This document shows, in pieces, positions 1 to 51,665 of a DNA stretch of 64,000 nucleotides. The notes beneath the pieces are model-generated. The model was not told where the DNA came from. It ran no database searches and saw only the letters and a list, made by a program, of their open reading frames with translations. The stretch's first letter is position 1. Every line of letters begins with the position of its first letter. The translations under genes were made by a program, and so were the position numbers. Source of the stretch: Macrostomum lignano (Eukaryota); contig NIVC01003168.1 in assembly GCA_002269645.1 (NCBI GenBank), positions 51,472 to 115,471 on the forward strand, in the 5' to 3' direction.

Positions 1-22
1 GTGTACACAGCCAATGTCTCAC

Positions 23-3000
23 CTGGCCAACAATTTGTCCACCGTCGATGGCGAGGTAGCTGCGCTGGCCAGAGCCAGTGTCCGCTCGGAGGGTCCGCAG
101 CGAGTCTTTCTTGCCGCCGACTGTGAAGAATGCTGCGGTGGTGGGTAGGCCAATTGATAATGTGTCTCAGCCAATTGATAATGTGTCTCAGCCAATTGAT
201 AATGTGTCTCTGCCAATTGATAATGTGTCTCAGCCCAATAATAATGTGTCTCAGCCAATTGATAATGTGTCTCAGCCAATTGATAATGTGTCTCTGCCAA
301 TTGATAATGTGTCTCAGCCAATTGATAATGTGTCTCTGCCAATTGATAATGTGTCTCAGCCTAATAATAATGTGTCTCAGCCAATTGATAATGTGTCTAT
401 GCCAATTGATAATGTGTCTCTGCCAATTGATAATGTGTCTCTGCCAATTGATAATGTGTCTCTGCCAATTGATAATGTGTCTCTGCCAATTGATAATGTG
501 TCTCTGCCAATTGATAATGTGTCTCAGCCTATTAATAATGTGTCTCTGCCAATTGATAATGTGTCTCTGCCAATTGATAATGTGTCTATGCCAATTGATA
601 ATGTGTCTCAGCCTATTAATAATGTGTCTCTGCCAATTGATCATGTGTCTCAGCCAATTGATAATGTACGCAGTCATGCGTACAGGCACACACTCACACA
701 GGAGTGTACAGCGGCCCTAACTTTATTTATCGTTAGGCATGTACACTTCACTGCGCCTTGGGGGTTGGCCCTCAATGGCGTTAATTGCACAAGCAGAGCC
801 AAGCCACGATTTCAATTTAGCCCCAAATTAATGTGACTGCACTTGGAATCGAGCCTGGGCCGCTGGGACATCAGAGCGCCGGGCTAAACTACTGATTGTT
901 CACTGATTGTTCACAGCTAATCGGTCACTGATTGTTCACAGCTAATCGGTCACTGATTGTTCACAGCTAATCGGTCACTGATTGTTCACAGCTAATCGGT
1001 CACTGATTGTTCACAGCTAATCGGTCACTGATTGTTCACAGCTAATCGGTCACTGATTGTTCACAGCTAATCGGTCACTGATTGGTCACAGCTAATCGGT
1101 CACTGATTGTTCACGGCTAATCGGTCACTGATTGTTCACAGCTAATCGGTCACTGATTGTTCACAGCTAATCGATCACTGATTGGGTCACAGCTAATCGA
1201 TCACTGATTGTTCACAGCTAATCGGTCACTGATTGGTCACAGCTAATCGGTCACTGATTGGTCACAGCTAATTGTTCGCAATGTGTCGAAAATGAATAAT
1301 CGCTCACAGCTCGGGTCCGAGTCCTCGGCCGACGCGTCCACGCTGTTGTCCGAATTGATGCGGACCGGCCGGCCAGTCACCCGGCTGTACAGCTGGATGA
1401 CGGTGTCCGGTTGGAACAGCCAGGCCAGGGACTGCCAGGCCAGCTTCTCCAGTGGATCCAGCGGAAGTTCCGGTTGCTGTTTTTGCTGCTGTTGCTGCTG
1501 CTCCTGCGGCCGCAGCTCCCGGGTGGTCTTGCCGTCCTCTTCGGCCTCGTCCAGCCACCTTTGCAGGTGACATTGGGAAAAGGGGTTGCCCGAATGTGCG
1601 CACTGAGTGTGCATTCTACGAGTAAATGTACACCGAAATGTACATTATAGAAGTAAATGTACATTCTAAGTGTAAATGTACATTCTAAGCGCAAATGTAC
1701 ATTCTAAAAGTAAATTTATATTCTAAGAGCAGATGTACATTCTAAGAGCAGATTTGCATTATACTCATAAGAGCAAATGTACATTCTAAGAGCAAATGTA
1801 CATTCTAAGAGCAAATGTACATTCTAAGAGCAAATGTACATTCTAAGAGCAAATGTACATTCTAAGAGCAGATTTGCATTATACTCATAAGAGCAAATGT
1901 ACATTCTAAGAGCAAATGTACATTCTAAGAGCAAATGTACATTCTAAGAGCAAATGTACATTCTAAGAGCAAATGTACATTCTAAGAGCAAATGTACATT
2001 CTAAGAGCAAATGTACATTCTAAGAGCAAATGTACATTCTAAGAGCAAATGTACATTCTAAGAGCAAATGTACATTCTAAGAGCAGATTTGCATTATACT
2101 CATAAGAGCAAATGTACATTCTAAGAGCAGATTTGCATTATACTCATAAGAGCAAATGTACATTCTAAGAGCAGATGTACATTCTAAGAGTAAACGTGCA
2201 TTTCATAATGAGTACAATGGTAGCAAAGTGCAGAGCATAGAAGTTATCATAGCCCTCACCTGTGACACAAGAAAGTCACTGGCGCGTCCGGCTTCGATGC
2301 CGCAGTCACCTGCACGCTGTCCAGGAACCAGCCGTAGCCGGCGCCTTTGCCGTCGTGCCCGATGACCAGCTTCTTGATGCGGCCGAGGTACACGGCCTCC
2401 AGCTCGAACACGTCAGTCTGGGGAGTACCGGGAGTGTGGCTGGATTTTCAAATGCGCCACTCTACGGGCAGCATCTTAAAAAAGAAAGTTTCAAAAGAAA
2501 ACAACTTGAAGAATGCTGCTCGCGAAATATTCCTGTTGCTGACGGCAGCGTGAAAATTCAATCCGGTTTTAGCGGCCTAATCCCTATTAGCGCGGATTAG
2601 CAGGGAATTAGGGTCAGCCGCTGCGACAGCTGTGAAAAATTCGCGATATTTATCCTTAAAGCTGGCGCATTTGTGTCAGGAGTGAGAAAAAATATATTTT
2701 ATAAATTTTATTCCTCCTGTTTTTGCTTGCTCAGCTCAAAAAATTTTCTGAGTAAAACAACGCCAGAAAAATCTCTTGATGTTTCGCCGTCGGCTGTCAC
2801 TTCTGCTGCAGCCGATGCTGCCGCTCTTGCTGCAGCTGCTACTGCCTGACATTCAGCCCGCGACCGCCTGCTCCGCGACCTCAGTTCGCGAAATTCAAAG
2901 CAAAATTGTGAACGGCAAGCTGGCTGCAATCCGCTGCTCCGACATCAAGGGAATTCTGCGCGGCGGCTCGCTGATGGACCCGGCAACCTACATCGAGTGC

Positions 3001-6000
3001 CTGCCGAACAGCACGGAGCACGCCTGCACCGGCGGCGCCCGGTGTCTCGGCTACCGCTGCGGCTGCCCGGACGGCCTGGTGTACATCGGTGCCCTCGGCT
3101 GCACTGACGTGGACGAGTGCTCGCTGAAGCTGGGCGGCCCGGCCTGCACGGGACCGCAGGATCGGGTCAGCTGCGTGAACCTTCAGGGCGGATTCGCGTG
3201 CAACTGCACCCAGCCGGGCCAGCAGTACCACCCGGAGTGGGGCTGCACCGACTCGCCCGAGTGCGTCTTCCCCTTCGTCTACAGGGGCAAGCGGTACACC
3301 CACTGCACCTCGGCTGACCGCGGCTACCTGTGGTGCGGCCTGAGCGATGATGTGGACCGCGACAACCGGTGGGTGGCGTGCCCGCTGAGCTACGGCACCG
3401 CGCACTGCGTGTTTCCCACGCGCTACCAGGGCGAGCTTCGGTCCGGCTGCTTCGTTGACAAGCCGACCGGCAAGCGGCTATGCTCGCTGACCAGCAACTT
3501 TGATGCCGATCGGGAGGCTGAGCTATGCATGGAGGTTGCTTAGGCCTACCGGACGTGTCACCATCAGCAGCTGTCTGTCATCCTGCGTTTTTTTGGTTTC
3601 TGGGACAAATCTGTGACTTCTTAATTCCTTCATTTTCAGCGCAGTGTTTTCGTCGAACGCAGAATTGATAGACTATATGTTTTCATAAATCATTCACTGA
3701 GAATTCAAAATTGGCAAGTTGGATTTTAAGTTATAAATGTTTCACAACAAAGCACCATGATACTCAAGCGCCAACTAAACTCTTTCGTTGTACTGAACTG
3801 ATCACGCATGAATATAATTAGTGCAACTCAGCTCAGCATTCATCAAAGTACGCACTGAATGTTTTTCTGCCATTTACGAGCGTATTTCAAGCTCGTGTCC
3901 TCACCTGGCCCATTTGAAATGGTTGCTGAGCTCCCGACACCGGCCTTGACAGCTTTCGCGGCCCGGTGTCTCCGTAGTCGCCGAACAGCACGACGCTGAC
4001 TGCGGCTTCGGTGCTGGCGTTGAAGCAGCTACCGGTGCGAACCTCGACGGTGTACTTTTCCACTGCAAGGTTTGGGAGAGTTGGGTTCTTGTGGAACTGC
4101 ATCTCTGTGGCTTGTACACTTGGTGTGGGTTCTTGTGGAACTGCATCTCTGTGGCTTGTACACTTGGTGTGGGTTCTTGTGGAACTGCATCTCTGTGGCT
4201 TGTACACTTGGTGTGGGTTCTTGTGGAACTGCATCTCTGTGGCTTGTACACTTGGTGTGGGTTCTTGTGGAACTGCATCTCTGTGGCTTGTACACTTGGT
4301 GTGGGTTCTTGTGGTACTGCATCTCTGTGGCTTGTACAGTTGGTGTGGGTTCTTGTGGAACTGCATCTCTGTGGCTTGTAAAGTTGGTGTGGGTTCTTGT
4401 GGAACTGCATCTCTGTGGCTTGTACAGTTGGTGTGGGTTCTTGTGGAACTGCATCTCTGTGGCTTGTACTGTTGGTGTGGGTTCTTGTGGAACTGCATCT
4501 CTGTGGCTTGTACAGTTGGTGTGGGTTCTTGTGGAACTGCATCTCTGTGGCTTGTACAGTTGGTGTGGGTTCTTGTGGAACTGCATCTCTGTGGCTTGTA
4601 CACTTGGTGTGGGTTCTTGTGGAACTGCATCTCTGTGGCTTGTACAGTTGGTGTGGATTCTTGTGGAACTGCATCTCTGTAGCTTGTACAGTTGGTGTGG
4701 ATTCTTGTGGATCTGCATCTCTGTAGCTTGTACAGTTGGTGTGGTTTCGTGTGGAACTGCATCTCTGTGGCTTGTACACTTGGTGTGCATTCTTGTGGAA
4801 CTGCATCTCTGTAGCTTGTACAGTTAGTGTGGATTCTTGTGGAACTGCATCTCTGTGGCTTGTACAGTTGGTGTGGATTCTTGTGGAACTGCATCTCTGT
4901 GGCTTGTACAGTTGGTGTGGGTTCTTGTGGAACTGCATCTCTGTGGCTTGTACTGTTGGTGTGGGTTCTTGTGGAACTGCATCTCTGTGGCTTGTACAGT
5001 TGGTGTGGATTCTTGTGGATCTGCATCTCTGTAGCTTGTACAGTTGGTGTGGGTTCTTGTGGAACTGCATCTCTGTAGCTTGTACAGTTGGTGTGGGTTC
5101 TTGTGGAACTGCATCTCTGTGGCTTGTACAGTTGGTGTGGGTTCTTGTGGAACTGCATCTCTGTGGCTTGTACTGTTGGTGTGGGTTCTTGTGGAACTGC
5201 ATCTCTGTGGCTTGTACACTTGGTGTGGGTTCTTGTGGAACTGCATCTCTGTGGCTTGTACACTTGGTGTGGGTTCTTGTGGAACTGCATCTCTGTGGCT
5301 TGTACACTTGGTGTGGGTTCTTGTGGAACTGCATCTCTGTGGCTTTTACAGTTGGTGTGGATTCTTGTGGAACTGCATCTCTGTGGCTTGTACACTTGGT
5401 GTGGATTCTTGTGGAACTGCATCTCTGTAGCTTGTACAGTTGGTGTGGATTCTTGTGGAACTGCATCTCTGTAGCTTGTACAGTTGGTGTGGATTCTTGT
5501 GGAACTGCATCTCTGTAGCTTGTACAGTTGGTGTGGATTCTTGTGGATCTGCATCTCTGTAGCTTGTACAGTTGGTGTGGTTTCTTGTGGAACTGCATCT
5601 CTGTGGCTTGTACACTTGGTGTGGATTCTTGTGGAACTGCATCTCTGTAGCTTGTACAGTTGGTGTGGATTCTTGTGGAACTGCATCTCTGTGGCTTGTA
5701 CAGTTGGTGTGGGTTCTTGTGGAACTGCATCTCTGTGGCTTGTACAGTTGGTGTGGGTTCTTGTGGAACTGCAATTCTGTGGCTTGTACAGTTGGTGTGG
5801 GTTCTTGTGGAACTGCATCTCTGTAGCTTGTACACTTGGTGTGGGTTCTTGTGGAACTGCATCTCTGTGGCTTGTACACTTGGTGTGGGTTCTTGTGGAA
5901 CTGCATCTCTGTGGCTTGTACACTTGGTGTGGGTTCTTGTGGAACTGCATCTCTGTGGCTTGTACAGTTGGTGTGGGTTCTTGTGGATCTGCATCTCTGT

Positions 6001-9000
6001 AGCTTGTACAGTTGGTGTGGGTTCTTGTGGATCTGCATCTCTGTAGCTTGTACAGTTGGTGTGGGTTCTTGTGGAACTGCATCTCTGTAGCTTGTACAGT
6101 TGGTGTGGGTTCTTGTGGAACTGCATCTCTGTGGCTTGTACAGTTGGTGTGGGTTCTTGTGGAACTGCATCTCTGTGGCTTGTACAGTTGGTGTGGGTTC
6201 TTGTGGAACTGCATCTCTGTGGCTTGTACAGTTGGTGTGGGTTCTTGTGGAACTGCATCTCTGTGGCTTGTACACTTGGTGTGGGTTCTTGTGGAACTGC
6301 ATCTCTGTGGCTTGTACACTTGGTGTGGGTTCTTGTGGAACTGCATCTCTGTGGCTTTTACAGTTGGTGTGGATTCTTGTGGAACTGCATCTCTGTGGCT
6401 TGTACACTTGGTGTGGATTCTTGTGGAACTGCATCTCTGTAGCTTGTACAGTTGGTGTGGATTCTTGTGGAACTGCATCTCTGTAGCTTGTACAGTTAGT
6501 GTGGATTCTTGTGGAACTGCATCTCTGTAGCTTGTACAGTTGGTGTGGATTCTTGTGGATCTGCATCTCTGTAGCTTGTACAGTTGGTGTGGTTTCTTGT
6601 GGAACTGCATCTCTGTGGCTTGTACACTTGGTGTGCATTCTTGTGGAACTGCATCTCTGTAGCTTGTACAGTTGGTGTGGATTCTTGTGAAACTGCATCT
6701 CTGTGGCTTGTACACTTGGTGTGGGTTCTTGTGGAACTGCATCTCTGTGGCTTGTACAGTTGGTGTGGGTTCTTGTGGAACTGCAATTCTGTGGCTTGTA
6801 CAGTTGGTGTGGGTTCTTGTGGAACTGCATCTCTGTAGCTTGTACAGTTAGTGTGGTTTCTTGTGGAACTGCATCTCTGTGGCTTGTACACTTGGTGTGC
6901 ATTCTTGTGGAACTGCATCTCTGTAGCTTGTACAGTTGGTGTGGGTTCTTGTGGAACTGCATCTCTGTGGCTTGTACAGTTGGTGTGGGTTCTTGTGGAA
7001 CTGCAATTCTGTGGCTTGTACAGTTGGTGTGGGTTCTTGTGGAACTGCATCTCTGTAGCTTGTACAGTTAGTGTGGGTTCTTGTGGAACTGCATCTCTGT
7101 ATAAACTTGAATAGTTATGGATTATTAAGGAACCGGATGCATAAATGTAGAGTTTACAATGGACTTTGAGTTATTTTCATCGATTTTTGCGCAGAACCAG
7201 AGCTGCAAAATGCACTCTCATTGCTCAGCTGTCGCCAGCAAGCCATTTTTCCATCTCAAACAAAGCCGAGGCAAAAGTCTCCGAGCTCAAAGCAGTCAAA
7301 AGAGGGCAGCAAAAAAGAAAGCAAAACGGATGAATTAAAAAGCGGCTCTCCAGGACGTGCCCGCCCAGCCCGTCATTCTAAAAGCCCCGGCAACCTGTGG
7401 GTCGCTACATTTTCTCCCTAATTACCCCGCTGCTTAGCCTCTCATTTGCCTGTGTTCTCAACTTCAGGCGGGGCAGCAGATTGCGGCGGAGGCAGAGCTT
7501 TGCCGGAGGAGGAGGAGGATCGCTCTTTGTCCAAAAATGGCGCAGGGAGGCTGGGGTGATGAGGCATCGCGGAAGAAATCTAATATCCCATAGAAAGACG
7601 CTAGTTGCTGGGGGACGGAGTAGCCGTTCACGAGATAAGCATTGATGTCGGATTCCATTTCATTAATTCCCCCCCCCAGCCTCCATCGGATTCTCCACGG
7701 ACCTGTCGCCCGAACCGATGGGGGGGGGTTCATTTTCCTTATTCGGACAGATTTTCACCTCTGTTGGGTTAATGAGGGCGGGTCAGAGGGGCATGGATGG
7801 GGAGCTGAGGAAGCAAATTCTGTCGAACGGGGGGAGGCAGTGCATTCTAATTAAACATACTGAACTGGCTCGAAGCTATGTAAGAACATAAAATTGAGCA
7901 TGAGAGCCGTGGCGCCCATACAGATACCTATAGATTTGCATAATGGTAAAGCAAAGTCCGGGGCAGCGCTTAAGCACACTATGCCCGAAGCCAATCAGCC
8001 CGGCATCCCGGCAGCTGAAGACTTTTCCAACAATTCTATAATGCCGAGTCCCCGATCCGGCTAGCAGATTAGGGAGTTAATTAAATGCCTGGACTGAGCC
8101 GCGCCAGTTGCCAGGGGGGGGATTGACGCATTCGGGGCCTATTAATTACCGCCTCGCGTGCCCCGTGCAGGTGGAGCGGACCCCTGCCGCACATGACAGG
8201 CTGCCTGTCACTTGAAGGGGAGGCAGGAGAGGCGGCGAGCAAGAGGGCGAGAGCAAACAATACAAATCACCGAGCGAGCTGCAGTCCTGACCTCAGCTCG
8301 GCAACCTCGCTCTCGGAATTCACTGAAGCCCTCTCGTCTCAACTCCCACACGGCCGTATCCAAGTGGTTGCCCAGGCAACCTCCGCCGACCAATTTCGGG
8401 ATTCAGGAGACGGATAGCTAGTGTTTTCCCCAGCCAGGAAATGAAGAGCTCTCGATGTCAGTAAAAAACAGGATTTGCAAGTGGACTGGCTGTAACTATA
8501 TATAGTCAGATAGATGGCTGGCTGGGCTATTTACAAAAGTCTGATATATTGTGAGCAAAGAGCGGCTCATTGTGGATATTCATCCTGCAAAAAACTTGTC
8601 ATAAAACATGTCCCAGATTTATATACTATTTATAGTCACTCTGCACTGCAGCAGTGGTCAGCAGTCCCAGTCACTCATCTCTGCACTCTGCACTGCAGCA
8701 GTGGTCAGCAGTCCCAGTCACTCATCTCTGCACTCTGCACTGCAGCAGAGGTCAGCAGTCCCAGTAACTCATCTCTGCACTCTGCACTGCAGCAGTGGTC
8801 AGCAGTCCCAGTCACTCATCTCTGCACTCTGCACTGCAGCAGAGGTCAGCAGTCCCAGTCACTCATCTCTGCACTCTGCACTGCAGCAGTGGTCAGCAGT
8901 CCCAGTCACTCATCTCTGTACTCTGCACTGCAGCAGAGGTCAGCAGTCCCAGTCACTCATCTCTGTACTCTGCACTGCAGCAGAGGTCAGCAGTCCCAGT

Positions 9001-11351
9001 CACTCATCTCTGCACTCTGCACTGCAGCAGAGGTCAGCAGTCCCAGTCACTCACTAGGCAGAGGCCTGGCGCCCTCCCGCACTGCTGGCAGCTCCTTGCT
9101 GGGCTCGCAGTCGGGCCGACTGTCCGCAAGCCAGCAGTTGAAGTCGAAGGTGAGCTGCTCAGCCGTGTGCGCGTCCGTCATGACCAGCTGGCCGACGCAC
9201 CAGTCCGGAGCGGGGCCTGAGCAGTCGTGGCTCAGTCGGACTTTCATCACCTCACCGATTGGGCCCGTGTTAATCTAAAAATGTAAAATTTGTTCCTATG
9301 TGAACTCAAAATCACGACTGAATAACATTTTTTCTGAACATTCTGCGAGGAAAATAATAATTGATTACACCTGCCCCAATGGCCAGATGTGCAACCGACA
9401 GCTCAGCCGCAGCTATTGCGCGGCGCATCTGAAGGCTGCGTACGGCTGTTCAGTCCAAGGACTGGGGGGGGGGGTCGCCACACGCACCCTCAATTACCCC
9501 AGCTAATGCTGGCACCCATTTTACAGCTGGGTGAACTGAAGCAATGCAGAGTTAAGTGTCTTGCTTAATGACACAAATTGTTCCGAGTGGGTCGAGAATC
9601 GAACCCCCGACCTTTCAGTCGATACTTCAAAATATTGACTTTAATTAATAAAACCCAACCGTAGTTAAAAAATGAAAAATGGAGAAGCAGATACGGGGCG
9701 ACAACAGCTCGCACTAAAGCACACAATAGCCCAGCAAAGTCGCAGATTGACTTTTGCATGCGCAATGTTTGAGCAAGATTGTACCTGCTGTTGACTCTGT
9801 GCCGGAGTTCGATAACTACTGCTCTGTGGGCAAATATAAGCAAATATGCGTCTTGCCAGCTACCTCGAACTCGTCTTCTTGGCCGGCTTGGAAAGGGTCA
9901 ACAATGCAGTCGGTTTGGATTGGCATGCTGAGCGCTATGGGCTCCGAGCTGCCCTGGCGGCCGTACACTGTGATGAAGACTCGGCTGCTGGTGCCGTGCT
10001 CCTCTGGCCCGGACTGGGTGCTCACCCGAACTTGCCACTGACCCTCTGCGGAGTGACATTCCGAGTTTCACTGAGCAGATTTATTTGAGCAATAAAATAA
10101 CTTGTAAAAGACTTAACTATCTGATCCCAGACTCTTCCATGAGCACTCCTCAGATCCCTGAGTGAGCTACCGCTTTCACTCCTCAGATCCCTGAGTGAGC
10201 TATCGCTTCCACTCTTCAGATCCCTGAGTGAGCTACCGCTTCCACTCCTCAGATCCCTGAGTGAGCTACCGCCGTCACTCCTCAGATCCCTGAGTGAGCT
10301 ACCGCTTCCACTCCTCAGATCCCTGAGTGAGCTACTCCTTCAAAGAGATTCTCAAACTCCAAGTTATCTCCCGCACCGAATTCAAAAGTTTCATAACCCC
10401 GCAGTCATCTCACTCGACTTCGAGGCATTCGCCCGGCTGTCTCGATTGTTGTTGACCCGCCTGCTGCCCGCCGGTTGCAGCGACTTGGCGCCAGCGCCGC
10501 CTTTGCTACCGTCAGCAGCCGGCCCGCCGTTCCAGGCGTTCATCGGCTTGAACTTTTCGGTGCCGGCCACCACCAGGTGATCGGAGCCGTTGTAGATTGC
10601 GGATAGGGACTCGATCTGCACGGCCGATCAGAATAGGGCTAAGTAGACCAGCTACAGACTAGGGTACACAGCAACGATTCAACAATTTAACTCAGCTCAC
10701 CGGCTCGCCGTCCACGGTGTAGAGGCGGCGCACCTGCATCTGGAACATGGCGGACAGGTCGTCCAGCACCTGCTCGTAGTCGCGCACGTTCCGCTTGTTG
10801 AGCAGCACGATGTGCTTCTTGAACGGTTCGCCGTTCTTTCTAGCGTAAATCCGTTTGCAGTCGGCCTGACGAAACGTCGGCGCGTAGGGCGCCGGCCCAG
10901 CCGCGTCCGGTTCTGAGCCCGGGTAGCTGCGGCTGTCCGGCTGGCTGCGCCTCGGCGCTGGCCGGATCGGGTCCGGCGCGGTACCGTTGCGCGCTTTTCC
11001 GCCGGCGCCACGCCAGGCAGGCGGCGGCGGCAGCGGCTGCTGTTGGCCTGGCAGCGCTCCCGCCCGGCGCTGGTTTGTGGAGCAAACGTAGTGGCCCTGG
11101 TTGGCGAAGTCTTCGACTGAGGCGACACGGTCGCGACCTTTCGGCGTGAAGACGGCGCGGACTCCGTAGCTGAGCTCCGGCATGCGGCCGGTGAGCTCGG
11201 TGAGCAGCGTGTCGAGGCCGCGGTAGCGGTTGGGGTGGATGGCCAGCCGCACGGGGTCCTTGTGCTGCACTCCGTCTCGATGGAAGAAGACAGTTTTAGC
11301 CGGACGTGGCCGGTTCTGCTCGTTGCTTGGGCCCAGCTGGGGCAGCGAATC

Positions 11352-11382
<31 letters not shown>

Positions 11383-11570
11383 TGCTCCTCCTGTGGTTGA
11401 TCGCTGTGGCCGTTTTCCATTTTGCCTTCCTCCAAGTCGAAGATTTGCTCTTGCGTTTCGTCGGTACCTTCTGCGGCTGCTGGAGCTGCCGCCGGAACTG
11501 CCTCCTCGTCTGCGAGCGGCCTATCGGAGGGCGGCGCCGGCTCTGGATCCGGCGCGGCTGCTGAGGACAT
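23..11570 (-). CDS. Doublecortin (2x DCX) + PLAT/LH2 (>=2x) protein, RP1/LOXHD1-like architecture; spliced, 3' end outside the window
   Basis: Phase-consistent GT-AG exons (minus strand): 10701-11570 (ATG; DCX1 KTVFFHRDG...GVRAVFTPKG...HYVCS; DCX2 KRIYARKNG...VRRLYTVDGEP), 10414-10615 (IESLSAIYNGSDHLVVAGTEKFK), 9864-10045 (WQVRVST...VFITVYG...PFQAGQEDEFE), 9055-9274 (IGEVMKVRLSHD...WCVGQL...FNCWL), 3905-4062 (YTVEVRTG...VSVVLFGDYGDTG), 2260-2417 (TDVFELEAVYLGRIKKLVIGHDG...WFLDSV), 1308-1558 (WLDEAEEDGKTTREL...IQLYSRVTGRPVRI), 23-132. Family assignment is from motif recognition. Confidence 0.88.
150..666. repeat. 21-bp minisatellite (CCAATTGATAATGTGTCTCTG), about 24 copies
   Basis: Direct reading; intronic. 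Confidence 0.95.
665..890 (-). mobile_element. Putative tRNA-derived SINE, second family
   Basis: Minus-strand head with GGCTCGATTCC B-box. The body (CACACAGG..GTGTACAGCGG...GGCATGTACAC...GCCTTGGGGGTTGGC on plus) is shared with 39600-39850. Confidence 0.45.
891..1270. repeat. 25-bp minisatellite (CACTGATTGTTCACAGCTAATCGGT), about 15 copies
   Basis: Direct reading; intronic. Confidence 0.95.
1625..2190. repeat. 19-bp minisatellite (AATGTACATTCTAAGAGCA) with interspersed variant units
   Basis: Direct reading; fills most of intron 1559-2259. Confidence 0.95.
2779..3543 (+). CDS. Intronless secreted protein: signal peptide, EB/EGF-like module, calcium-binding EGF, two fibronectin type II domains; nested antisense in an intron of the DCX-PLAT gene
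   Basis: Continuous GC-rich ORF of about 254 aa. Hydrophobic N-terminus; CTGGARCLGYRCGCPDG; DVDEC...SCVNLQGGFACNC (cbEGF consensus); CVFPFVYRGKRYTHCT...LWCGLSDDVDRDNRWVAC and CVFPTRYQG...LCSLTSNFDAD (FN2 consensus). It lies in host intron 2418-3904. Confidence 0.85.
   Translation: MFRRRLSLLLQPMLPLLLQLLLPDIQPATACSATSVREIQSKIVNGKLAAIRCSDIKGILRGGSLMDPATYIECLPNSTEHACTGGARCLGYRCGCPDGLVYIGALGCTDVDECSLKLGGPACTGPQDRVSCVNLQGGFACNCTQPGQQYHPEWGCTDSPECVFPFVYRGKRYTHCTSADRGYLWCGLSDDVDRDNRWVACPLSYGTAHCVFPTRYQGELRSGCFVDKPTGKRLCSLTSNFDADREAELCMEVA
4078..7100. repeat. 44-bp minisatellite (GTTGGTGTGGGTTCTTGTGGAACTGCATCTCTGTGGCTTGTACA), about 68 copies
   Basis: Direct reading; source of the dozens of spurious ORFs at 3.9-7.1 kb. 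Confidence 0.97.
8367..8380. promoter_or_regulatory. Full palindromic RFX X-box inside an intron of the DCX-PLAT gene
   Basis: GTTGCCCAGGCAAC (two perfect GTTGCC half-sites) in a GC-rich, non-repetitive intronic island, about 7400-8420. Confidence 0.5.
8637..9052. repeat. 47-bp minisatellite, about 9 copies, starting at the splice donor
   Basis: Unit CAGCAGTCCCAGTCACTCATCTCTGCACTCTGCACTGCAGCAGTGGT. Confidence 0.95.
9365..9620 (-). mobile_element. Second copy of the CORE-SINE (5' head eroded)
   Basis: High identity to 20255-20510 by visual alignment; B-box GGTTCGATTC retained. Confidence 0.7.
10144..10335. repeat. 33-bp minisatellite, about 6 copies
   Basis: Unit CACTCCTCAGATCCCTGAGTGAGCTACCGCTTC. 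Confidence 0.9.
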
Positions 11571-11829
11571 CGAGGCGGCTGCTCAACTGCCAGCGGCAAT
11601 GGGGGAACCAACGCAGTAGGGTGAGGGTCAGTTGCAACTAGTTTGCTTGTCCACCAGAATGTTGGTAGCAAGAGGCTACTCCACGAGGCAAGCGGGCTGG
11701 AGGGAGAGAAACAATGGAAGAGCTGAGGCGAACGGGGAGAGTGCGGAGAGAGGAGAGTCGCGTCGAGCTGAGCGCGCAGTTGCTTAAATAAATGATTAGA
11801 GACACTTCACAAGGCTTGCTGCGCCATCG

Positions 11830-12518
11830 GTTGCCAATGACAACCACCTGGCACGCCAGTGCAGATGCGTATTGGGGTTGGCTGGTGGAGCTACTGGGGG
11901 TAGGGAAGACCAAGTTTAGGACCAAAGAGCACAAATCTGATCCCCGAAGCGCTGCGCAGACAATGGCCCTTCCTCTCTATCAATTCTCTCTCTGTGTTTC
12001 TACTTCTCTCGCCACCCTTTCTCGCGGGCGCCTTCCAAATGCCATGGCAACCAGGGGGGGTCTATTGAGTGGCAGCTGACCCAATAAAAGTAATATGGTA
12101 CCACTGATTCCGTCGTTGCCGGTCCGCCTGACTTTCATAGCCAATTCTCAATATGCAAAGCGCACTGCCCCCGGCTCCGCCCGTGCGAATTGGGCAAACG
12201 GAAAGGCAGGGAGAGACGCAGAATCAAAGACCGGAGTCGCCATGGAGCCTGAGCAGCCCAGGGCGGCCGATTGGAGTGGCGCAGGTGGGGGTCTGGCTTT
12301 GATTACCGAGTGGGGAATTAGTCCCAGCTACAAACTGACTTCTCTGGTTCAATCCGGAGCGCCAGCGGGCCGCAACCAGCGCCCTCCTGTCCGGCTTTTA
12401 TTCTTTGAAGTGGCGACGGGACAATTTTTAGAGGCGCCACACAGCAGTGCTGGATAATCAATTGCGGCCGAGGCGCAGGCACCCCCGTTGCCATGGGGTT
12501 GCCATGGGGTTGCCATGG
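11830..12518. promoter_or_regulatory. Cluster of RFX X-box-like motifs upstream of the DCX-PLAT gene
   Basis: GTTGCCAATGACAAC at 11830-11844; ATGCCATGGCAAC at 12039-12051; three tandem GTTGCCATGG at 12487, 12498 and 12509. All are 0.3-0.95 kb upstream of the ATG at 11570. Confidence 0.55.
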
Positions 12519-45700: not shown

Positions 45701-48700
45701 CTCGGACAAAATCGGACTCACAGTCAGGGCAAGGCAGCTTGGCCACCGTGCCGTTCGGAGTTCGAGGCCAGGTGAGGAAGCCGTCATTGTAGGCCGGGCA
45801 AAACCGCCTCTGCTCCTTGCTGAGGGTGGCTGCAAGTTGGCAGGGAGACTCAGTGACAGTAACGCGACTCTGGCTCAGAGCAGTAGTAAACCAGCTAGTC
45901 AGAAAAGTCTTTCAAAGGTAATTCGAGCCAATTTATTCTTAGAGCTCATTAAATGTGTCTGAAAGAAGACTGGAAAATTGAAGAGCTATTCTTACTCATG
46001 ATGCGGCATAAGGATTCTGGATAAATTCTTCGTTCCGGATCGCTGCAGGCAAGAAGATTCAAGAAGACTTCATCTACTATGACGAAATTGAATGAACTGC
46101 AATTATGAGAATGCCGCTGCTTCGGTGGTTCCGGGGTATTTTTCCCGATTTCCTGTTGCGACTCTTTGCGCTTGCCAAACGGCGGTTGAGAAACGGAAGA
46201 ATTTCGTCGGGCTGAACCGGCCCACCGCACCAGGGGTCGGGATGGGGGTTGGCCAAAAACTACAGGGTTGCAGGGCGGGGAGGAAAATCGGGCAAAAAAC
46301 AAAAAACCCCAGCGCTCGCTGTCCCCCCCGCGCTCGTGTTTGCCCCGGGATTTTCGGTGTGAATAATTTATGCTACCTTGGCAGCTGGGCGAACCAGCCA
46401 GCGTTCCCGGGACTTGGGGGGTTCCTCCCGGAACTGCGTGCGGCTCAGCAGGCGGCAGGGGCGCAGGGCGGGGGCAGGAGCAAGGGGGGGGCGCTGGCCA
46501 ATCCTCCAGTTGTCAAAAGTATCCGTCAGGTCCTGTCGGGCGTGCTGATTCCAGCTGGCCAACTTGCTGACCGCTGTGTGTTTTCTAAGAATTTCTTAGC
46601 GCTACCTGGGCAGCACCTGTGTCGGGCGACTTTCTTTAACTTGCGTCGTGATGGGTACTTTCGGATTGTGAGTTCGGGTTCCTCCGAATCTCTGAGTCAC
46701 TCAGAATCTCTAGGTCACTCCGAATTTCTGGGTCGCTCCGAATTTCTGGGTCGCTCCGAATCTCTGAGTCACTCCGAATCACTGGATCACTCCGAATCTA
46801 TGGGTCACTCCGAATCTCTGGGTCACTCCGAATCTATGGGTCACTCCGAATCTCTGGGTCACTTCGAATCTCTGGGTCACTCCGAATCTCTGGGTCACTC
46901 CGAATTTCTGGGTCACTCCGAATCTCTGGGTCGCTCCAAATCTCTGGGTCACTCCGAATCTCTGGGTCACTCCGAATTTCTGGGTCACTCCGAATCTCTG
47001 GGTCACTCCGAATCTATGGGTCACTCCGAATCTCTGGGTCACTTCGAATTTCTGGGTCACTCCGAATCTCTGGGTCGCTCCGAATCTCTGGGTCACTTCG
47101 AATCTCTAGGTCACTCCGAATCTCTGGGTCACTCCGAATTTCTGGGTCACTCCGAATCTCTGGGTCGCTCCAAATCTCTGGGTCACTCCGAATCTCTGGG
47201 TCACTTCGAATCTCTAGGTCACTCCGAATCTCTGGGTCGCTCCGAATCTCTGGGTCACTCCGAATCTATGGGTCACTCCGAATTTCTGGGTCACTCCGAA
47301 TCTCTGGGTCACTCCGAATCTCTGGGTCACTCCGAATCTCTGGGTCACTCCGAAATATGAGGAATACTGAGCTTGTCTCTGCATGTCCCTCTTAATATCA
47401 GGTTTACGCCTAGACATTAGGGTCACTCTGAAGTATAAAATAGACTGAAATAATCCCACTATTAAGTTGGCTATTAAATTAAAGCAATGCGGAAGCAGTC
47501 TCTCCATGGCCGTAGCTCAAACAGTCAAACAGTCCAACTAATGCTTCTCATCTAATTAATAACAATATTCAGCATTCATTATCTGTCGTTAAAAGCTTGA
47601 TCGATGTGAATATTTTTTCCGCCAAGAGAATCGAGGATGGACTGATTAAAAATCCACTGGGAAGGGTAATCCCATTTATCTAATAGGCCACACTGACTGG
47701 GATAAATAGGCCATCATCAGCTTGGCAAGCTCAATGAAAATTATTGATGAGGCTTATGAGGAGAAAGTGCTCATCTGAATTCGCCTCGGTTTATAAGCTT
47801 GCGACAACCAGCGTTCAGTTTCCACTCAGAGCTGCCAGCCAATCAAAATACGAGTTAGCTGATCGAGTCACGTGACTGTTATTAGCCCCCTTAGAGGCAG
47901 GAGATAATGGCCCATTGGATAAACTTATACGCTCGCATGGTGCTGTGAAGCCCCCATTTCTACCCTAGCTTAGATCCTGTAGCCAATGGATATCAGCTTG
48001 TAGAGTCACGTGACTTAACGGTAAGGAGAAACCCGCCTCAATTTCTACCCTAGCTTGGATTCTGTAGCCAATGGAGATCAGCTTGTAGAGTCACGTGACT
48101 TAACGGCAAGGAGAAACCCGCCTCAATTTCTACCCTAGCTTGGATTCTGTAGCCAATGGAGATCGGCTTGTAGAGTCACGTGACTTAACGGCAGGGAGAA
48201 ACCCGCCTCAATTTCTACCCTAGCTTGGATTCTGTAGCCAATGGAGATCAGCTTGTAGAGTCACGTGACTTAACGGTAAGGAGAAACCCGCCTCAATTTC
48301 TACCCTAGCTTGGATTCTGTAGCCAATGGAGATCAGCTTGTAGAGTCACGTGACTTAACGGCAAGGAGAAACCCGCCTCAATTTCTACCCTAGCTTGGAT
48401 TCTGTAGCCAATGGAGATCAGCTTGTAGAGTCACGTGACTTCTTGGCCTCAAATGCGACCTAGCTTAAAATTCTGTAGCCAATAAAGATCAGTCCAGTGA
48501 CTTGGAGTTGCAGAGATCCAACTTCACTTTCTGCCCTAGCCTATCGCTCCATGTAGGATATAATTCGAAAAAAGCCAAGTCAATTTACTTTAATCCATTC
48601 GTAAACCAACTACTCGTAAGGAAACAAGAACAAGCAGGTGAACAGAAAGTCAATGCTAAAAGCCCACTAAACTTCATTAGCCGGCTGTAGTCTGTACACC

Positions 48701-50774: not shown

Positions 50775-51665
50775 CACTCTCAGCCCCATGCCACACACAC
50801 TCTCAGCCCCATGCCACACACTCTCAGCCCCATGCCACACACTCTCAGCCCCATGCCACACTCTCAGCCCCATGCCACACTCTCAGCCCCATGCCACACT
50901 CTCAGCCCCATGCCACACACTCTCAGCCTCATGCCACACTCTCAGCCCCATGCCACACACTCTCAGCCCCATGCCACACTCTCTCAGCCCCATGCCACAC
51001 TCTCAGCCCCATGCCACACACTCTCAGCCCCATGCCACACTCTCAGCCCCATGCCACACTCTCAGCCCCATGCCACACTCTCAGCCCCATGCCACACTCT
51101 CAGCCCCATGCCACACACTCTCAGCCTCATGCCACACTCTCAGTCCCATGCCACACACTCTCAGCCTCATGCCACACTCTCAGCCCCATGCCACACACTC
51201 TCAGCCTCATGCCACACTCTCAGCCCCATGCCACACACTCTCAGCCTCATGCACACTCTCAGTCCCATGCCACACACACTCTCAGCCCCATGCCACACAC
51301 TCAGCCCCATGCCACACTCTCTCAGCCCCATGCCACACTCTCAGTCCCATGCCACACACTCTCAGCCCCATGCCACACACTCTCAGCCCCATGCCACACT
51401 CTCAGCCCCATGCCACACTCTCAGCCCCATGCCACACACTCTCAGCCCCATGCCACACTCTCAGCCCCATGCCACACTCTCAGCCCCATGCCACACACTC
51501 TCAGCCCCATGCCACACTCTCAGCCCCATGCCACACTCTCAGCCCCATGCCACACACTCTCAGCCCCATGCCACACTCTCAGCCCCATGCCACACACTCA
51601 GCCCCATGCCACACACTCTCAGCCCCATGCCACACTCTCAGCCCCATGCCACACTCTCAGCCCAT
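50775..51665. repeat. 21-25-bp minisatellite (CTCAGCCCCATGCCACA(CA)CT)
   Basis: Direct reading; lies between the GPCR and prosaposin. Confidence 0.95.

What the first reader, a model, noticed from the sequence alone, without database searches (positions are those of the whole stretch)
2779..3543. Intronless EGF/FN2 secreted-protein gene nested antisense in a PLAT-splitting intron
Seen: a clean 254-aa ORF (signal peptide, EB/EGF-like, cbEGF, 2x FN2) occupies half of the 1.5-kb intron that splits the host's second PLAT domain. Every other gene here is intron-rich. Known: FN2 domains bind collagen/gelatin and are best characterised in chordate proteins (MMP2/9, mannose receptors, seminal plasma proteins). 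Inference: a retroposed or otherwise recently inserted gene encoding a small collagen-binding or adhesive secreted protein, with an unusual domain combination for a protostome.
Basis: partly seen in the sequence, partly recalled or inferred. Interest (0 to 1): 0.7.

Follow-up and report, generated by a model that had tools for sequence, protein, structure and literature searches.

The report
Small secreted-protein gene inside flatworm intron
A real, conserved single-exon gene for a small secreted EGF/fibronectin-type-II protein lies antisense inside an intron of a Macrostomum lignano gene. This layout is ordinary, and nothing marks the gene as a recent or retroposed insertion.

Summary
Window 2779-3543 (+) is a 254-aa ORF with a signal peptide, an EGF-like module, a calcium-binding EGF and two FN2 domains (Pfam fn2 59 and 34 bits, cut-off 22). 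It fills 51% of a 1487-nt intron (2418-3904, minus strand) that splits the second PLAT domain of a DCX-PLAT gene.

The window is Macrostomum lignano NIVC01003168.1. The same protein sits in the same intron on three 96-98% identical contigs, with 0 differences in 765 nt of ORF against 7 in 722 nt of intron flank.

A second species carries an uninterrupted ortholog (80% aa identity, dN/dS 0.16, dS 0.8, all 22 Cys kept). So this is a selected protein-coding gene that is old relative to that split.

Retroposition has no support. I found no parent or paralog among 1.84 billion representative proteins, and no poly(A) remnant, target-site duplication or inverted repeat.

FN2 domains were already reported in turbellarians and copepods. 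Antisense single-exon nested genes are the commonest nested type. The full domain order appears restricted to this lineage, and expression and function remain untested.

Verdict: an ordinary nested gene, a new member of known kinds, of low interest.

The parts
2779..3543 (+). Complete single-exon CDS (254 aa plus stop) of the nested gene. Corresponds to NIVC01003168.1:54250-55014.
2779..2868 (+). Signal peptide (aa 1-30). Basic MFRRR, then a Leu-rich core, then A-T-A before Cys31. The ortholog has the same layout ending A-A-A before Cys.
   Evidence: read from the sequence. No signal-peptide predictor was available.
2869..2997 (+). N-terminal segment (aa 31-73) with Cys31 and Cys53 and no family match. 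Conserved in the ortholog (omega 0.13 for aa 31-108).
2998..3102 (+). EGF-like module 1 (aa 74-108, six Cys). Weak EB-module similarity only.
3106..3246 (+). Calcium-binding EGF (aa 110-156). Carries D-V-D-E-C and the motif C-V-N-LQGG-F-A-C-N-C.
3262..3381 (+). FN2 domain 1 (Cys162-Cys201), canonical. It keeps Tyr173, Trp185 and Trp198. The Tyr of the usual N-Y-D motif is Val192.
3406..3528 (+). FN2 domain 2 (Cys210-Cys250), divergent. The pocket positions are Leu220, Leu234, Phe241 and Ala247, with no Trp.
   Evidence: No PDB FN2 alignment covers it.
2700..2706 (+). TATAAAT, a candidate TATA box 79 nt upstream of the ATG (inferred).
2650..2660 (+). TTATCCTTAAA, an upstream block shared with the ortholog contig (L004 about 26-38). 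Possible promoter or 5'UTR element (inferred).
3591..3605 (+). TTTTGGTTTCTGGGA, a downstream block shared with the ortholog contig. Probable 3'UTR (inferred).
2418..3904 (-). Host intron, 1487 nt, containing the nested gene. GC is 0.40-0.42 outside the ORF and 0.66 inside it.
3905..4062 (-). Host exon encoding the N-terminal half of PLAT domain 2.
2260..2417 (-). Host exon encoding the C-terminal half of PLAT domain 2.

Best explanation
This is a genuine, independently encoded, single-exon gene of Macrostomum lignano. It lies antisense inside intron 2418-3904 of a DCX-multi-PLAT gene.

The product enters the secretory pathway through a cleavable signal peptide. The mature protein is about 224 aa and rich in disulfides (22 Cys). 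Its order is an N-terminal Cys pair, an EGF-like module, a calcium-binding EGF, a canonical FN2 and a degenerate FN2.

The most likely mode of action is as a small extracellular adaptor. FN2-1 would bind a collagen- or gelatin-like or other hydrophobic ligand through its aromatic pocket. The EGF pair would serve as a calcium-stiffened spacer or protein-interaction surface. FN2-2 would be mainly structural.

The gene is old. It predates the copies in the M. lignano assembly and the split from a second species. It has evolved under purifying selection. It is probably transcribed from its own TATA-type promoter and not SL trans-spliced.

Shown: the ORF, the domains, the nesting, the copy number, the selection and the absence of insertion hallmarks. 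Inferred: secretion, promoter, ligand and physiological role.
For: - Domains: fn2 twice and EGF_CA by Pfam. Closest solved structures are the MMP-2/9 and PDC-109 FN2 domains and LDLR EGF-AB.
- Nesting and splice sites.
- Organism and record.
- Copies: three contigs carry the identical protein in collinear 96-98% identical DNA. There are 0 differences in 765 nt of ORF against 7 in 722 nt of intron flank, where about 7.4 would be expected under the same rate (Poisson P about 6e-4).
- Ortholog L004: 79-80% aa identity, dN/dS 0.16, dS 0.82, all 22 Cys invariant, and the NxT sites at 77 and 142 are kept.
- Composition: GC3 of 0.84 matches the host exons at 0.70-0.87, so the composition is native.
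- Public annotation: the gene is called on all three contigs of an RNA-seq-guided annotation, including L001, where no host gene is called.
- Trans-splicing: I saw no [T/C]TNCAG SL-acceptor motif in the 360 nt upstream when reading against the motif.
Against: - No transcript data could be examined here, so independent plus-strand expression, the transcription start and the poly(A) site are unproven.
- No AATAAA lies on the plus strand between the stop and the host exon.
- The nature (DNA or RNA) and species of the ortholog contig are unknown.
- The structure model was unusable (pLDDT 39.6).
- FN2-1 lacks one pocket Tyr and FN2-2 lacks nearly all pocket aromatics, so collagen binding is an extrapolation from vertebrate FN2 domains.
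Confidence: 0.7

Rival explanations
1. Recent retrogene. An mRNA of a spliced parent gene was reverse-transcribed and inserted into the PLAT intron not long ago.
For: The CDS has no introns, although it is built from EGF and FN2 modules. In vertebrate genes such modules are typically separate exons bounded by phase-1 introns (established knowledge, after Patthy). M. lignano genes average about 5 introns. The intron without the ORF would be about 720 nt, close to the 544-nt intron at the same position in PLAT domain 1.
Against: No parent or paralog shares the N-terminal, EGF and FN2 order in 5.8 billion clustered or 1.84 billion representative proteins, nor in the window. There is no A-rich tail, no target-site duplication, and no flank repeat beyond chance. 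The gene is present in all three diverged copies, with an ortholog at dS about 0.8. So any retroposition would be ancient and its traces erased.
Confidence: 0.08
2. The ORF is only the last exon of a longer plus-strand transcription unit. That would mean an upstream non-coding exon, or SL trans-splicing or operon membership, so it would not be strictly a one-exon gene.
For: [quoted passage not shown] A CAG at 2764-2766 could serve as an acceptor 12 nt before the ATG. The transcript ends were not observed.
Against: An in-frame TGA lies at 2749-2751, and the signal peptide begins at the ATG in both species. The ortholog has no in-frame CAG upstream. I saw no [T/C]TNCAG motif upstream. No polypyrimidine tract precedes the CAG. 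Any additional exon could only be non-coding.
Confidence: 0.12
3. Functional rival. The tandem FN2 pair works like vertebrate Binder-of-SPerm / ELSPBP1 proteins, binding choline phospholipids on sperm as a reproductive-tract secretion of this hermaphrodite. On this view it is not a collagen binder.
For: The best single-stretch matches to the FN2 pair are ELSPBP1-like and BSP proteins from echidna, reptiles and cattle. The two domains are separated by only 8 residues, as in PDC-109.
Against: FN2-2 lacks the Trp and Tyr residues that hold phosphorylcholine in PDC-109, and FN2-1 lacks one Tyr (plus knowledge of structure 1H8P). Identity is only about 40%. No FN2 or fibronectin entry appears in the held supplements of the M. 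lignano seminal-fluid in situ screen. dN/dS of 0.16 is not the fast evolution usual for seminal proteins.
Confidence: 0.07
4. The ORF is a non-functional chance ORF, a decaying pseudogene or an annotation artefact in GC-rich intronic DNA.
For: GC-rich DNA yields long ORFs, for example the antisense 174-aa ORF at 2881-3405 and the repeat-derived ORFs elsewhere in the window.
Against: Four family-level domain matches, 22 conserved Cys, dN/dS of 0.16 and zero changes among three copies.
Confidence: 0.02

Closest known systems
Antisense, single-exon nested (intronic) protein-coding genes of metazoans
   Same: The whole CDS lies within one intron of a larger gene, on the opposite strand, without introns. 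In humans about 63% of nested genes are antisense and about 41% are single-exon. [quoted passage not shown]
   Different: The host intron is short (1.49 kb, about the M. lignano average of 1.1-1.4 kb), so the nested CDS fills half of it. Transcript ends and any interference with the host are unknown.
FN2 collagen-binding domains of gelatinases MMP-2 and MMP-9 and of fibronectin
   Same: FN2-1 aligns end to end with each MMP-2/9 FN2 repeat (31-37 bits per domain). It keeps the four Cys, the F-P-F motif, Tyr173, Trp185 and Trp198.
   Different: There is no catalytic or FN1 context. There are two domains, not three. One pocket Tyr is replaced in FN2-1 and FN2-2 is degenerate. Binding is untested.
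BSP / PDC-109 / ELSPBP1 tandem-FN2 sperm-binding proteins
   Same: Small secreted proteins whose main feature is closely spaced FN2 domains. They give the best pairwise matches to the FN2 pair.
   Different: Here an EGF plus cbEGF N-terminal half replaces the short glycosylated N-terminus. The choline-binding aromatics are missing in domain 2. Identity is about 40%. There is no evidence of reproductive expression.
Turbellarian FN2-containing proteins (VAL/SCP-TAPS plus FN2 in Schmidtea and Dugesia) and the copepod FN2 expansion
   Same: These are FN2 domains in protostomes, showing that the domain is not confined to vertebrates (PMC3435950; salmon louse genome preprint).
   Different: The architectures differ: SCP/TAPS plus FN2, or trypsin plus FN2, against EGF, cbEGF and two FN2 here. 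No protein with the present order was found outside this lineage.
Factor XII / HGFA heavy chains (FN2 plus EGF modules)
   Same: They combine FN2 and EGF modules in one secreted protein. The factor XII FN2 domain is a weak hit (E=9e-4).
   Different: The module order is reversed, and there is no FN1, kringle or protease domain. They are vertebrate-only and not homologous as whole proteins.

Membership tests
FN2 domain (Pfam PF00040) | Profile match above the curated cut-off (22.2 bits) | tested here: met
   FN2-1 scores 59.1 bits and FN2-2 scores 34.0 bits. The whole protein scores 75.5 bits.
FN2 domain (Pfam PF00040) | Four Cys with canonical spacing per domain | tested here: met
   C162/C176/C186/C201 and C210/C224/C235/C250, invariant in the ortholog. 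Disulfide connectivity was not testable.
FN2 domain (Pfam PF00040) | Aromatic ligand pocket (Tyr, Trp, Tyr, Trp positions as in MMP-2 and PDC-109) | tested here: inconclusive
   FN2-1 keeps 3 of 4 (Y173, W185, W198; V192 replaces Tyr). FN2-2 keeps 0 of 4 as Tyr or Trp (L220, L234, F241, A247).
FN2 domain (Pfam PF00040) | Gelatin or collagen binding | not testable with these tools
   Needs recombinant protein.
Calcium-binding EGF (PF07645) | Profile match above the cut-off (27 bits), plus D-x-D-E-C and the C-x-[DN]-x4-[FY]-x-C-x-C motif | tested here: met
   28.3 bits on the sub-sequence and 26.4 bits on the whole protein. DVDEC and CVNLQGGFACNC were read from the sequence.
EB module (PF01683) | Profile match above the cut-off (24.3 bits) | tested here: not met
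   14.4 bits, E=0.04, covering only profile positions 25-46 of 52.
Nested intronic gene | Entire coding sequence inside a single intron of another gene | tested here: met
   CDS 2779-3543 lies within intron 2418-3904, whose flanking exons join into one PLAT domain.
Nested intronic gene | Own transcript, independent of the host pre-mRNA | not testable with these tools
   Support is indirect only. It is called as a gene on three contigs of an RNA-seq-based annotation, once without a host call.
Retrogene (processed gene copy) | Intron-containing parent gene elsewhere | tested here: not met
   No protein shares the N-terminal and EGF part except the ortholog. No paralog is in the window. The whole M. 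lignano genome could not be searched directly.
Retrogene (processed gene copy) | Poly(A) remnant and target-site duplications | tested here: not met
   No A-run lies after the stop. The only flank repeats are 71-75% identical over 24 nt. Local alignment of the flanks is within the shuffle range.
BSP / ELSPBP1 family | Tandem FN2 domains with choline-binding aromatics in each domain, and male-tract expression | tested here: not met
   Tandem arrangement is met, with an 8-residue linker. The aromatics are absent in FN2-2. Expression was not testable, and the gene is absent from the seminal-fluid screen supplement.

The most novel reading that the evidence does not exclude
The gene could be a Macrostomum-specific invention: an EGF, cbEGF and double-FN2 protein whose tandem FN2 pair was recruited independently of vertebrates for a BSP/ELSPBP1-like role. 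That role would be binding sperm or partner membranes, or acting as a component of the worm's reproductive or adhesive secretions. If so, it would be a case of convergent use of tandem FN2 modules in reproductive fluids across phyla.
Probability: 0.06. Interest if true: 0.5.

Novelty: new member of a known kind. Interest (0 to 1): 0.2.

Why it matters
It matters little beyond annotation. The result adds one well-supported example of FN2 domains in a free-living flatworm, a domain once thought vertebrate-specific. It also adds a lineage-restricted module order. It shows that a compact 1.5-kb intron can carry a conserved antisense gene through a genome duplication. For Macrostomum researchers it offers a small, easily cloned candidate extracellular-matrix or secretion protein that can be tested by in situ hybridisation and RNAi. 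It does not open a new question about gene origin.

Tried and rejected
1. AlphaFold2 on the two-sequence alignment gave pLDDT 39.6. The model is unusable, so no fold search was run.
2. A scan of JGI metagenome contigs found no relative.
3. A search for host PLAT orthologs returned only three M. lignano fragments, so the orthologous intron in other species could not be inspected.
4. A profile search with the two orthologs added only a bovine BSP hit.
5. The run accession of the ortholog (SRR28338163) appears in no held paper. Its species and library type remain unknown.
6. The held supplements of the M. lignano seminal-fluid screen list no FN2 or fibronectin entry.
7. Neither a transposon origin nor target-site duplication finds support. 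The flanks share no inverted or direct repeat beyond shuffles (inverted score 24 against a null of 18.9 +/- 2.1, maximum 26).
8. A second plus-strand ORF of exactly 254 aa at 8514-9278 looked like a paralog. It is a 47-bp tandem-repeat artefact antisense to host sequence.
9. The minus-strand 174-aa ORF at 2881-3405 was rejected as a host exon. Its third codon positions coincide with first positions of the plus frame, where substitutions are few, and it has no domain.
10. No Rfam family reaches threshold in window 1-12000.


Full report
**What is there**

Window 2779-3543 (+) is an uninterrupted ORF of 254 codons from ATG to TAG. An in-frame TGA lies 30 nt upstream of the ATG.

Pfam finds two fibronectin type II domains: 75.5 bits on the whole protein, and 59.1 and 34.0 bits when each is scanned alone, against a cut-off of 22.2. 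It also finds a calcium-binding EGF, at 26.4 bits on the whole protein and 28.3 bits on the sub-sequence, against a cut-off of 27. Residues 73-154 align to the EGF-A/EGF-B pair of the LDL receptor, and FN2-1 aligns to every FN2 repeat of MMP-2, MMP-9, fibronectin and PDC-109.

By reading the sequence, the first 30 residues form a typical signal peptide: MFRRR, a Leu-rich core, and A-T-A before Cys31. The mature part has 22 cysteines. That count fits one extra pair plus 3+3 (EGF modules) and 2+2 (FN2 domains) disulfides.

**The host and the nesting**

On the minus strand, 3905-4062 and 2260-2417 are exons bounded by ttgcag|, |GTGAGG, ccccag| and |GTGAGG. These match the M. lignano splice motifs reported in PMC8629364. 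Joined, they give a single PLAT domain (49 bits, profile 1-102 of 117).

Upstream on the host strand lie a DCX exon (87 bits) and an earlier PLAT domain that is also split near profile position 55-59, by a 544-nt intron. A further PLAT lies downstream. The public annotation calls a 1291-aa DCX plus PLAT product here. The intron holding the ORF is therefore 2418-3904, 1487 nt, and the ORF fills 51% of it.

**Source and copies**

The window is 100% identical to NIVC01003168.1 from position 51472. NIVC01 is the Macrostomum lignano Mlig_3_7 assembly (PMC5730564), and UniRef names the host fragments as M. lignano.

The identical 254-aa protein is annotated on two further contigs whose DNA is collinear and 96-98% identical over more than 10 kb, host exons and introns included. 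M. lignano is a hidden polyploid (PMC10468722 abstract), so these are homeologs or haplotypes, not separate insertions. Across the three copies there are 0 differences in the 765-nt ORF against 7 in the 722 nt of surrounding intron. About 7.4 differences would be expected at the intron rate, giving a Poisson P of about 6e-4.

**An ortholog and selection**

One other protein in 5.8 billion clusters matches full length: P0002, on a 1069-nt Logan contig (L004) from run SRR28338163. Its real start is the ATG at L004:171, which opens a signal peptide of the same design.

| Measure | Value |
|---|---|
| Amino-acid identity | 79-80% |
| Nucleotide differences at codon positions 1/2/3 | 39/30/90 |
| dN | 0.13 |
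| dS | 0.82 |
| dN/dS | 0.16 |
| Omega, N-terminal part and the two FN2 domains | about 0.13 |
| Omega, cbEGF | 0.29 |

All 22 Cys and both N-x-T sites are kept. The flanks have diverged except for short blocks: TTATCCTTAAA upstream and TTTTGGTTTC-GGGA downstream.

The gene is therefore functional, and it is old relative to that species split. I could not learn which species the run is, nor whether it is DNA or RNA. Either way, the coding sequence is uninterrupted in both species.

**Origin**

A full HMMER pass over 1.84 billion representative proteins gave 857 hits. All of them match only residues of about 155-252, the FN2 region. None shares the N-terminal or EGF part, apart from a generic multi-EGF protein. 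A profile search added only a bovine BSP, and the window holds no paralog.

Insertion hallmarks are also absent. No A-rich tract follows the stop, and there is no target-site duplication. The two 361-nt flanks share no direct or inverted similarity beyond shuffles. GC3 of 0.84 is like the host exons at 0.70-0.87.

Retroposition is therefore unsupported, and 'recent' is contradicted. The lack of introns between modules, which in vertebrates are classic phase-1 exon-shuffling units, is the only hint left of an RNA-mediated past. That hint rests on background knowledge, not on a test done here.

**Transcription unit (inferred)**

A TATAAAT sits at 2700-2706, 79 nt before the ATG. By eye, no [T/C]TNCAG SL-acceptor motif occurs in the upstream 360 nt when one search is read against the motif. 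No AATAAA lies on the plus strand before the host exon; only variants such as TATAAA are present.

The public gene models derive from an RNA-seq-guided transcriptome, and they include this gene on all three contigs, once without any host call. That is indirect evidence for a separate transcript. No read-level data were available to me.

**Likely function**

FN2-1 keeps the F-P-F motif, Tyr173, Trp185 and Trp198, but has Val192 where the N-Y-D tyrosine sits in MMP-2 and PDC-109. FN2-2 has Leu220, Leu234, Phe241 and Ala247 at the four pocket positions. The ortholog likewise has non-aromatic residues at three of these positions and Phe at the fourth. No solved FN2 aligned to FN2-2 in the listed alignments.

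I therefore favour a secreted matrix- or ligand-binding adaptor in which FN2-1 is the binding module and the cbEGF gives calcium-dependent rigidity.

A BSP/ELSPBP1-like phospholipid- or sperm-binding role is a minor rival. Those proteins give the best matches to the FN2 pair. However, the choline-binding aromatics are missing in domain 2, and the M. lignano seminal-fluid screen supplements list no FN2 protein.

**Comparison with what is known**

FN2 domains were long regarded as vertebrate-specific. They have since been reported in turbellarian VAL proteins (PMC3435950) and in 74 salmon-louse genes carrying 192 domain copies. A rotifer FN2 protein is among my hits.

Nested genes are common in animals. 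In humans about 63% are antisense and about 41% are single-exon (PMC3192792). What is particular here is the module order, seen only in this lineage, and the tight fit within an average-sized intron (M. lignano mean 1.1-1.4 kb).

**Verdict**

This is a real antisense nested gene for a secreted EGF/FN2 protein, but it is not demonstrably retroposed and not recent. It is a new member of known kinds, and its interest is low (0.2).

Noticed in passing
window 4082-7100: A 44-bp satellite, 68.6 copies at 96% match, fills the host intron immediately upstream of the PLAT-2 exon. It is open in several frames and gives spurious ORFs of up to 951 aa, one of which reads straight into the exon.
   Followed up: partly
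window 149-667, 900-1272, 1636-2202, 8637-9053, 10144-10335: Most host-gene introns checked carry their own tandem array (periods 21, 25, 19/120, 47 and 33 bp). No tandem array was found in the intron with the nested gene. These arrays account for much of the divergence between the three genome copies.
   Followed up: partly
window 8514-9278 (+): A second ORF of exactly 254 aa. It is not a paralog. It is a product of the 47-bp repeat and of sequence antisense to host exon 9050-9274.
   Followed up: yes
window 2260-4062: The locus is length-symmetric: exon 158 nt, flank 361 nt, ORF 765 nt, flank 361 nt, exon 158 nt. No sequence symmetry accompanies it, and copy L003 has a 1-nt deletion in one flank. 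I take it as coincidence.
   Followed up: yes
window 9275-9818 versus 2418-3904: PLAT domains 1 and 2 of the host are both split near Pfam profile position 55-59. This suggests an intron inherited through domain duplication, and only the second copy holds a gene.
   Followed up: partly
window about 53112-54473 (-) and 60259-60909 (-): Exons of a prosaposin-like gene (SapB_1 and SapB_2, E down to 5.5e-27) and of an oxysterol-binding-protein gene (E=4.5e-25). Both appear to be multi-exon.
   Followed up: partly
window 46092-47360 (+): A 422-aa ORF whose C-terminal two thirds is a SESLGH-type repeat. It is probably another tandem-repeat artefact and not a gene.
   Followed up: no
L004 1-170 versus window 2630-2778: The gene caller extended the ortholog to a TTG at L004:78, giving 281 aa. 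The conserved signal peptide shows that the true start is the ATG at L004:171, giving 250 aa.
   Followed up: yes
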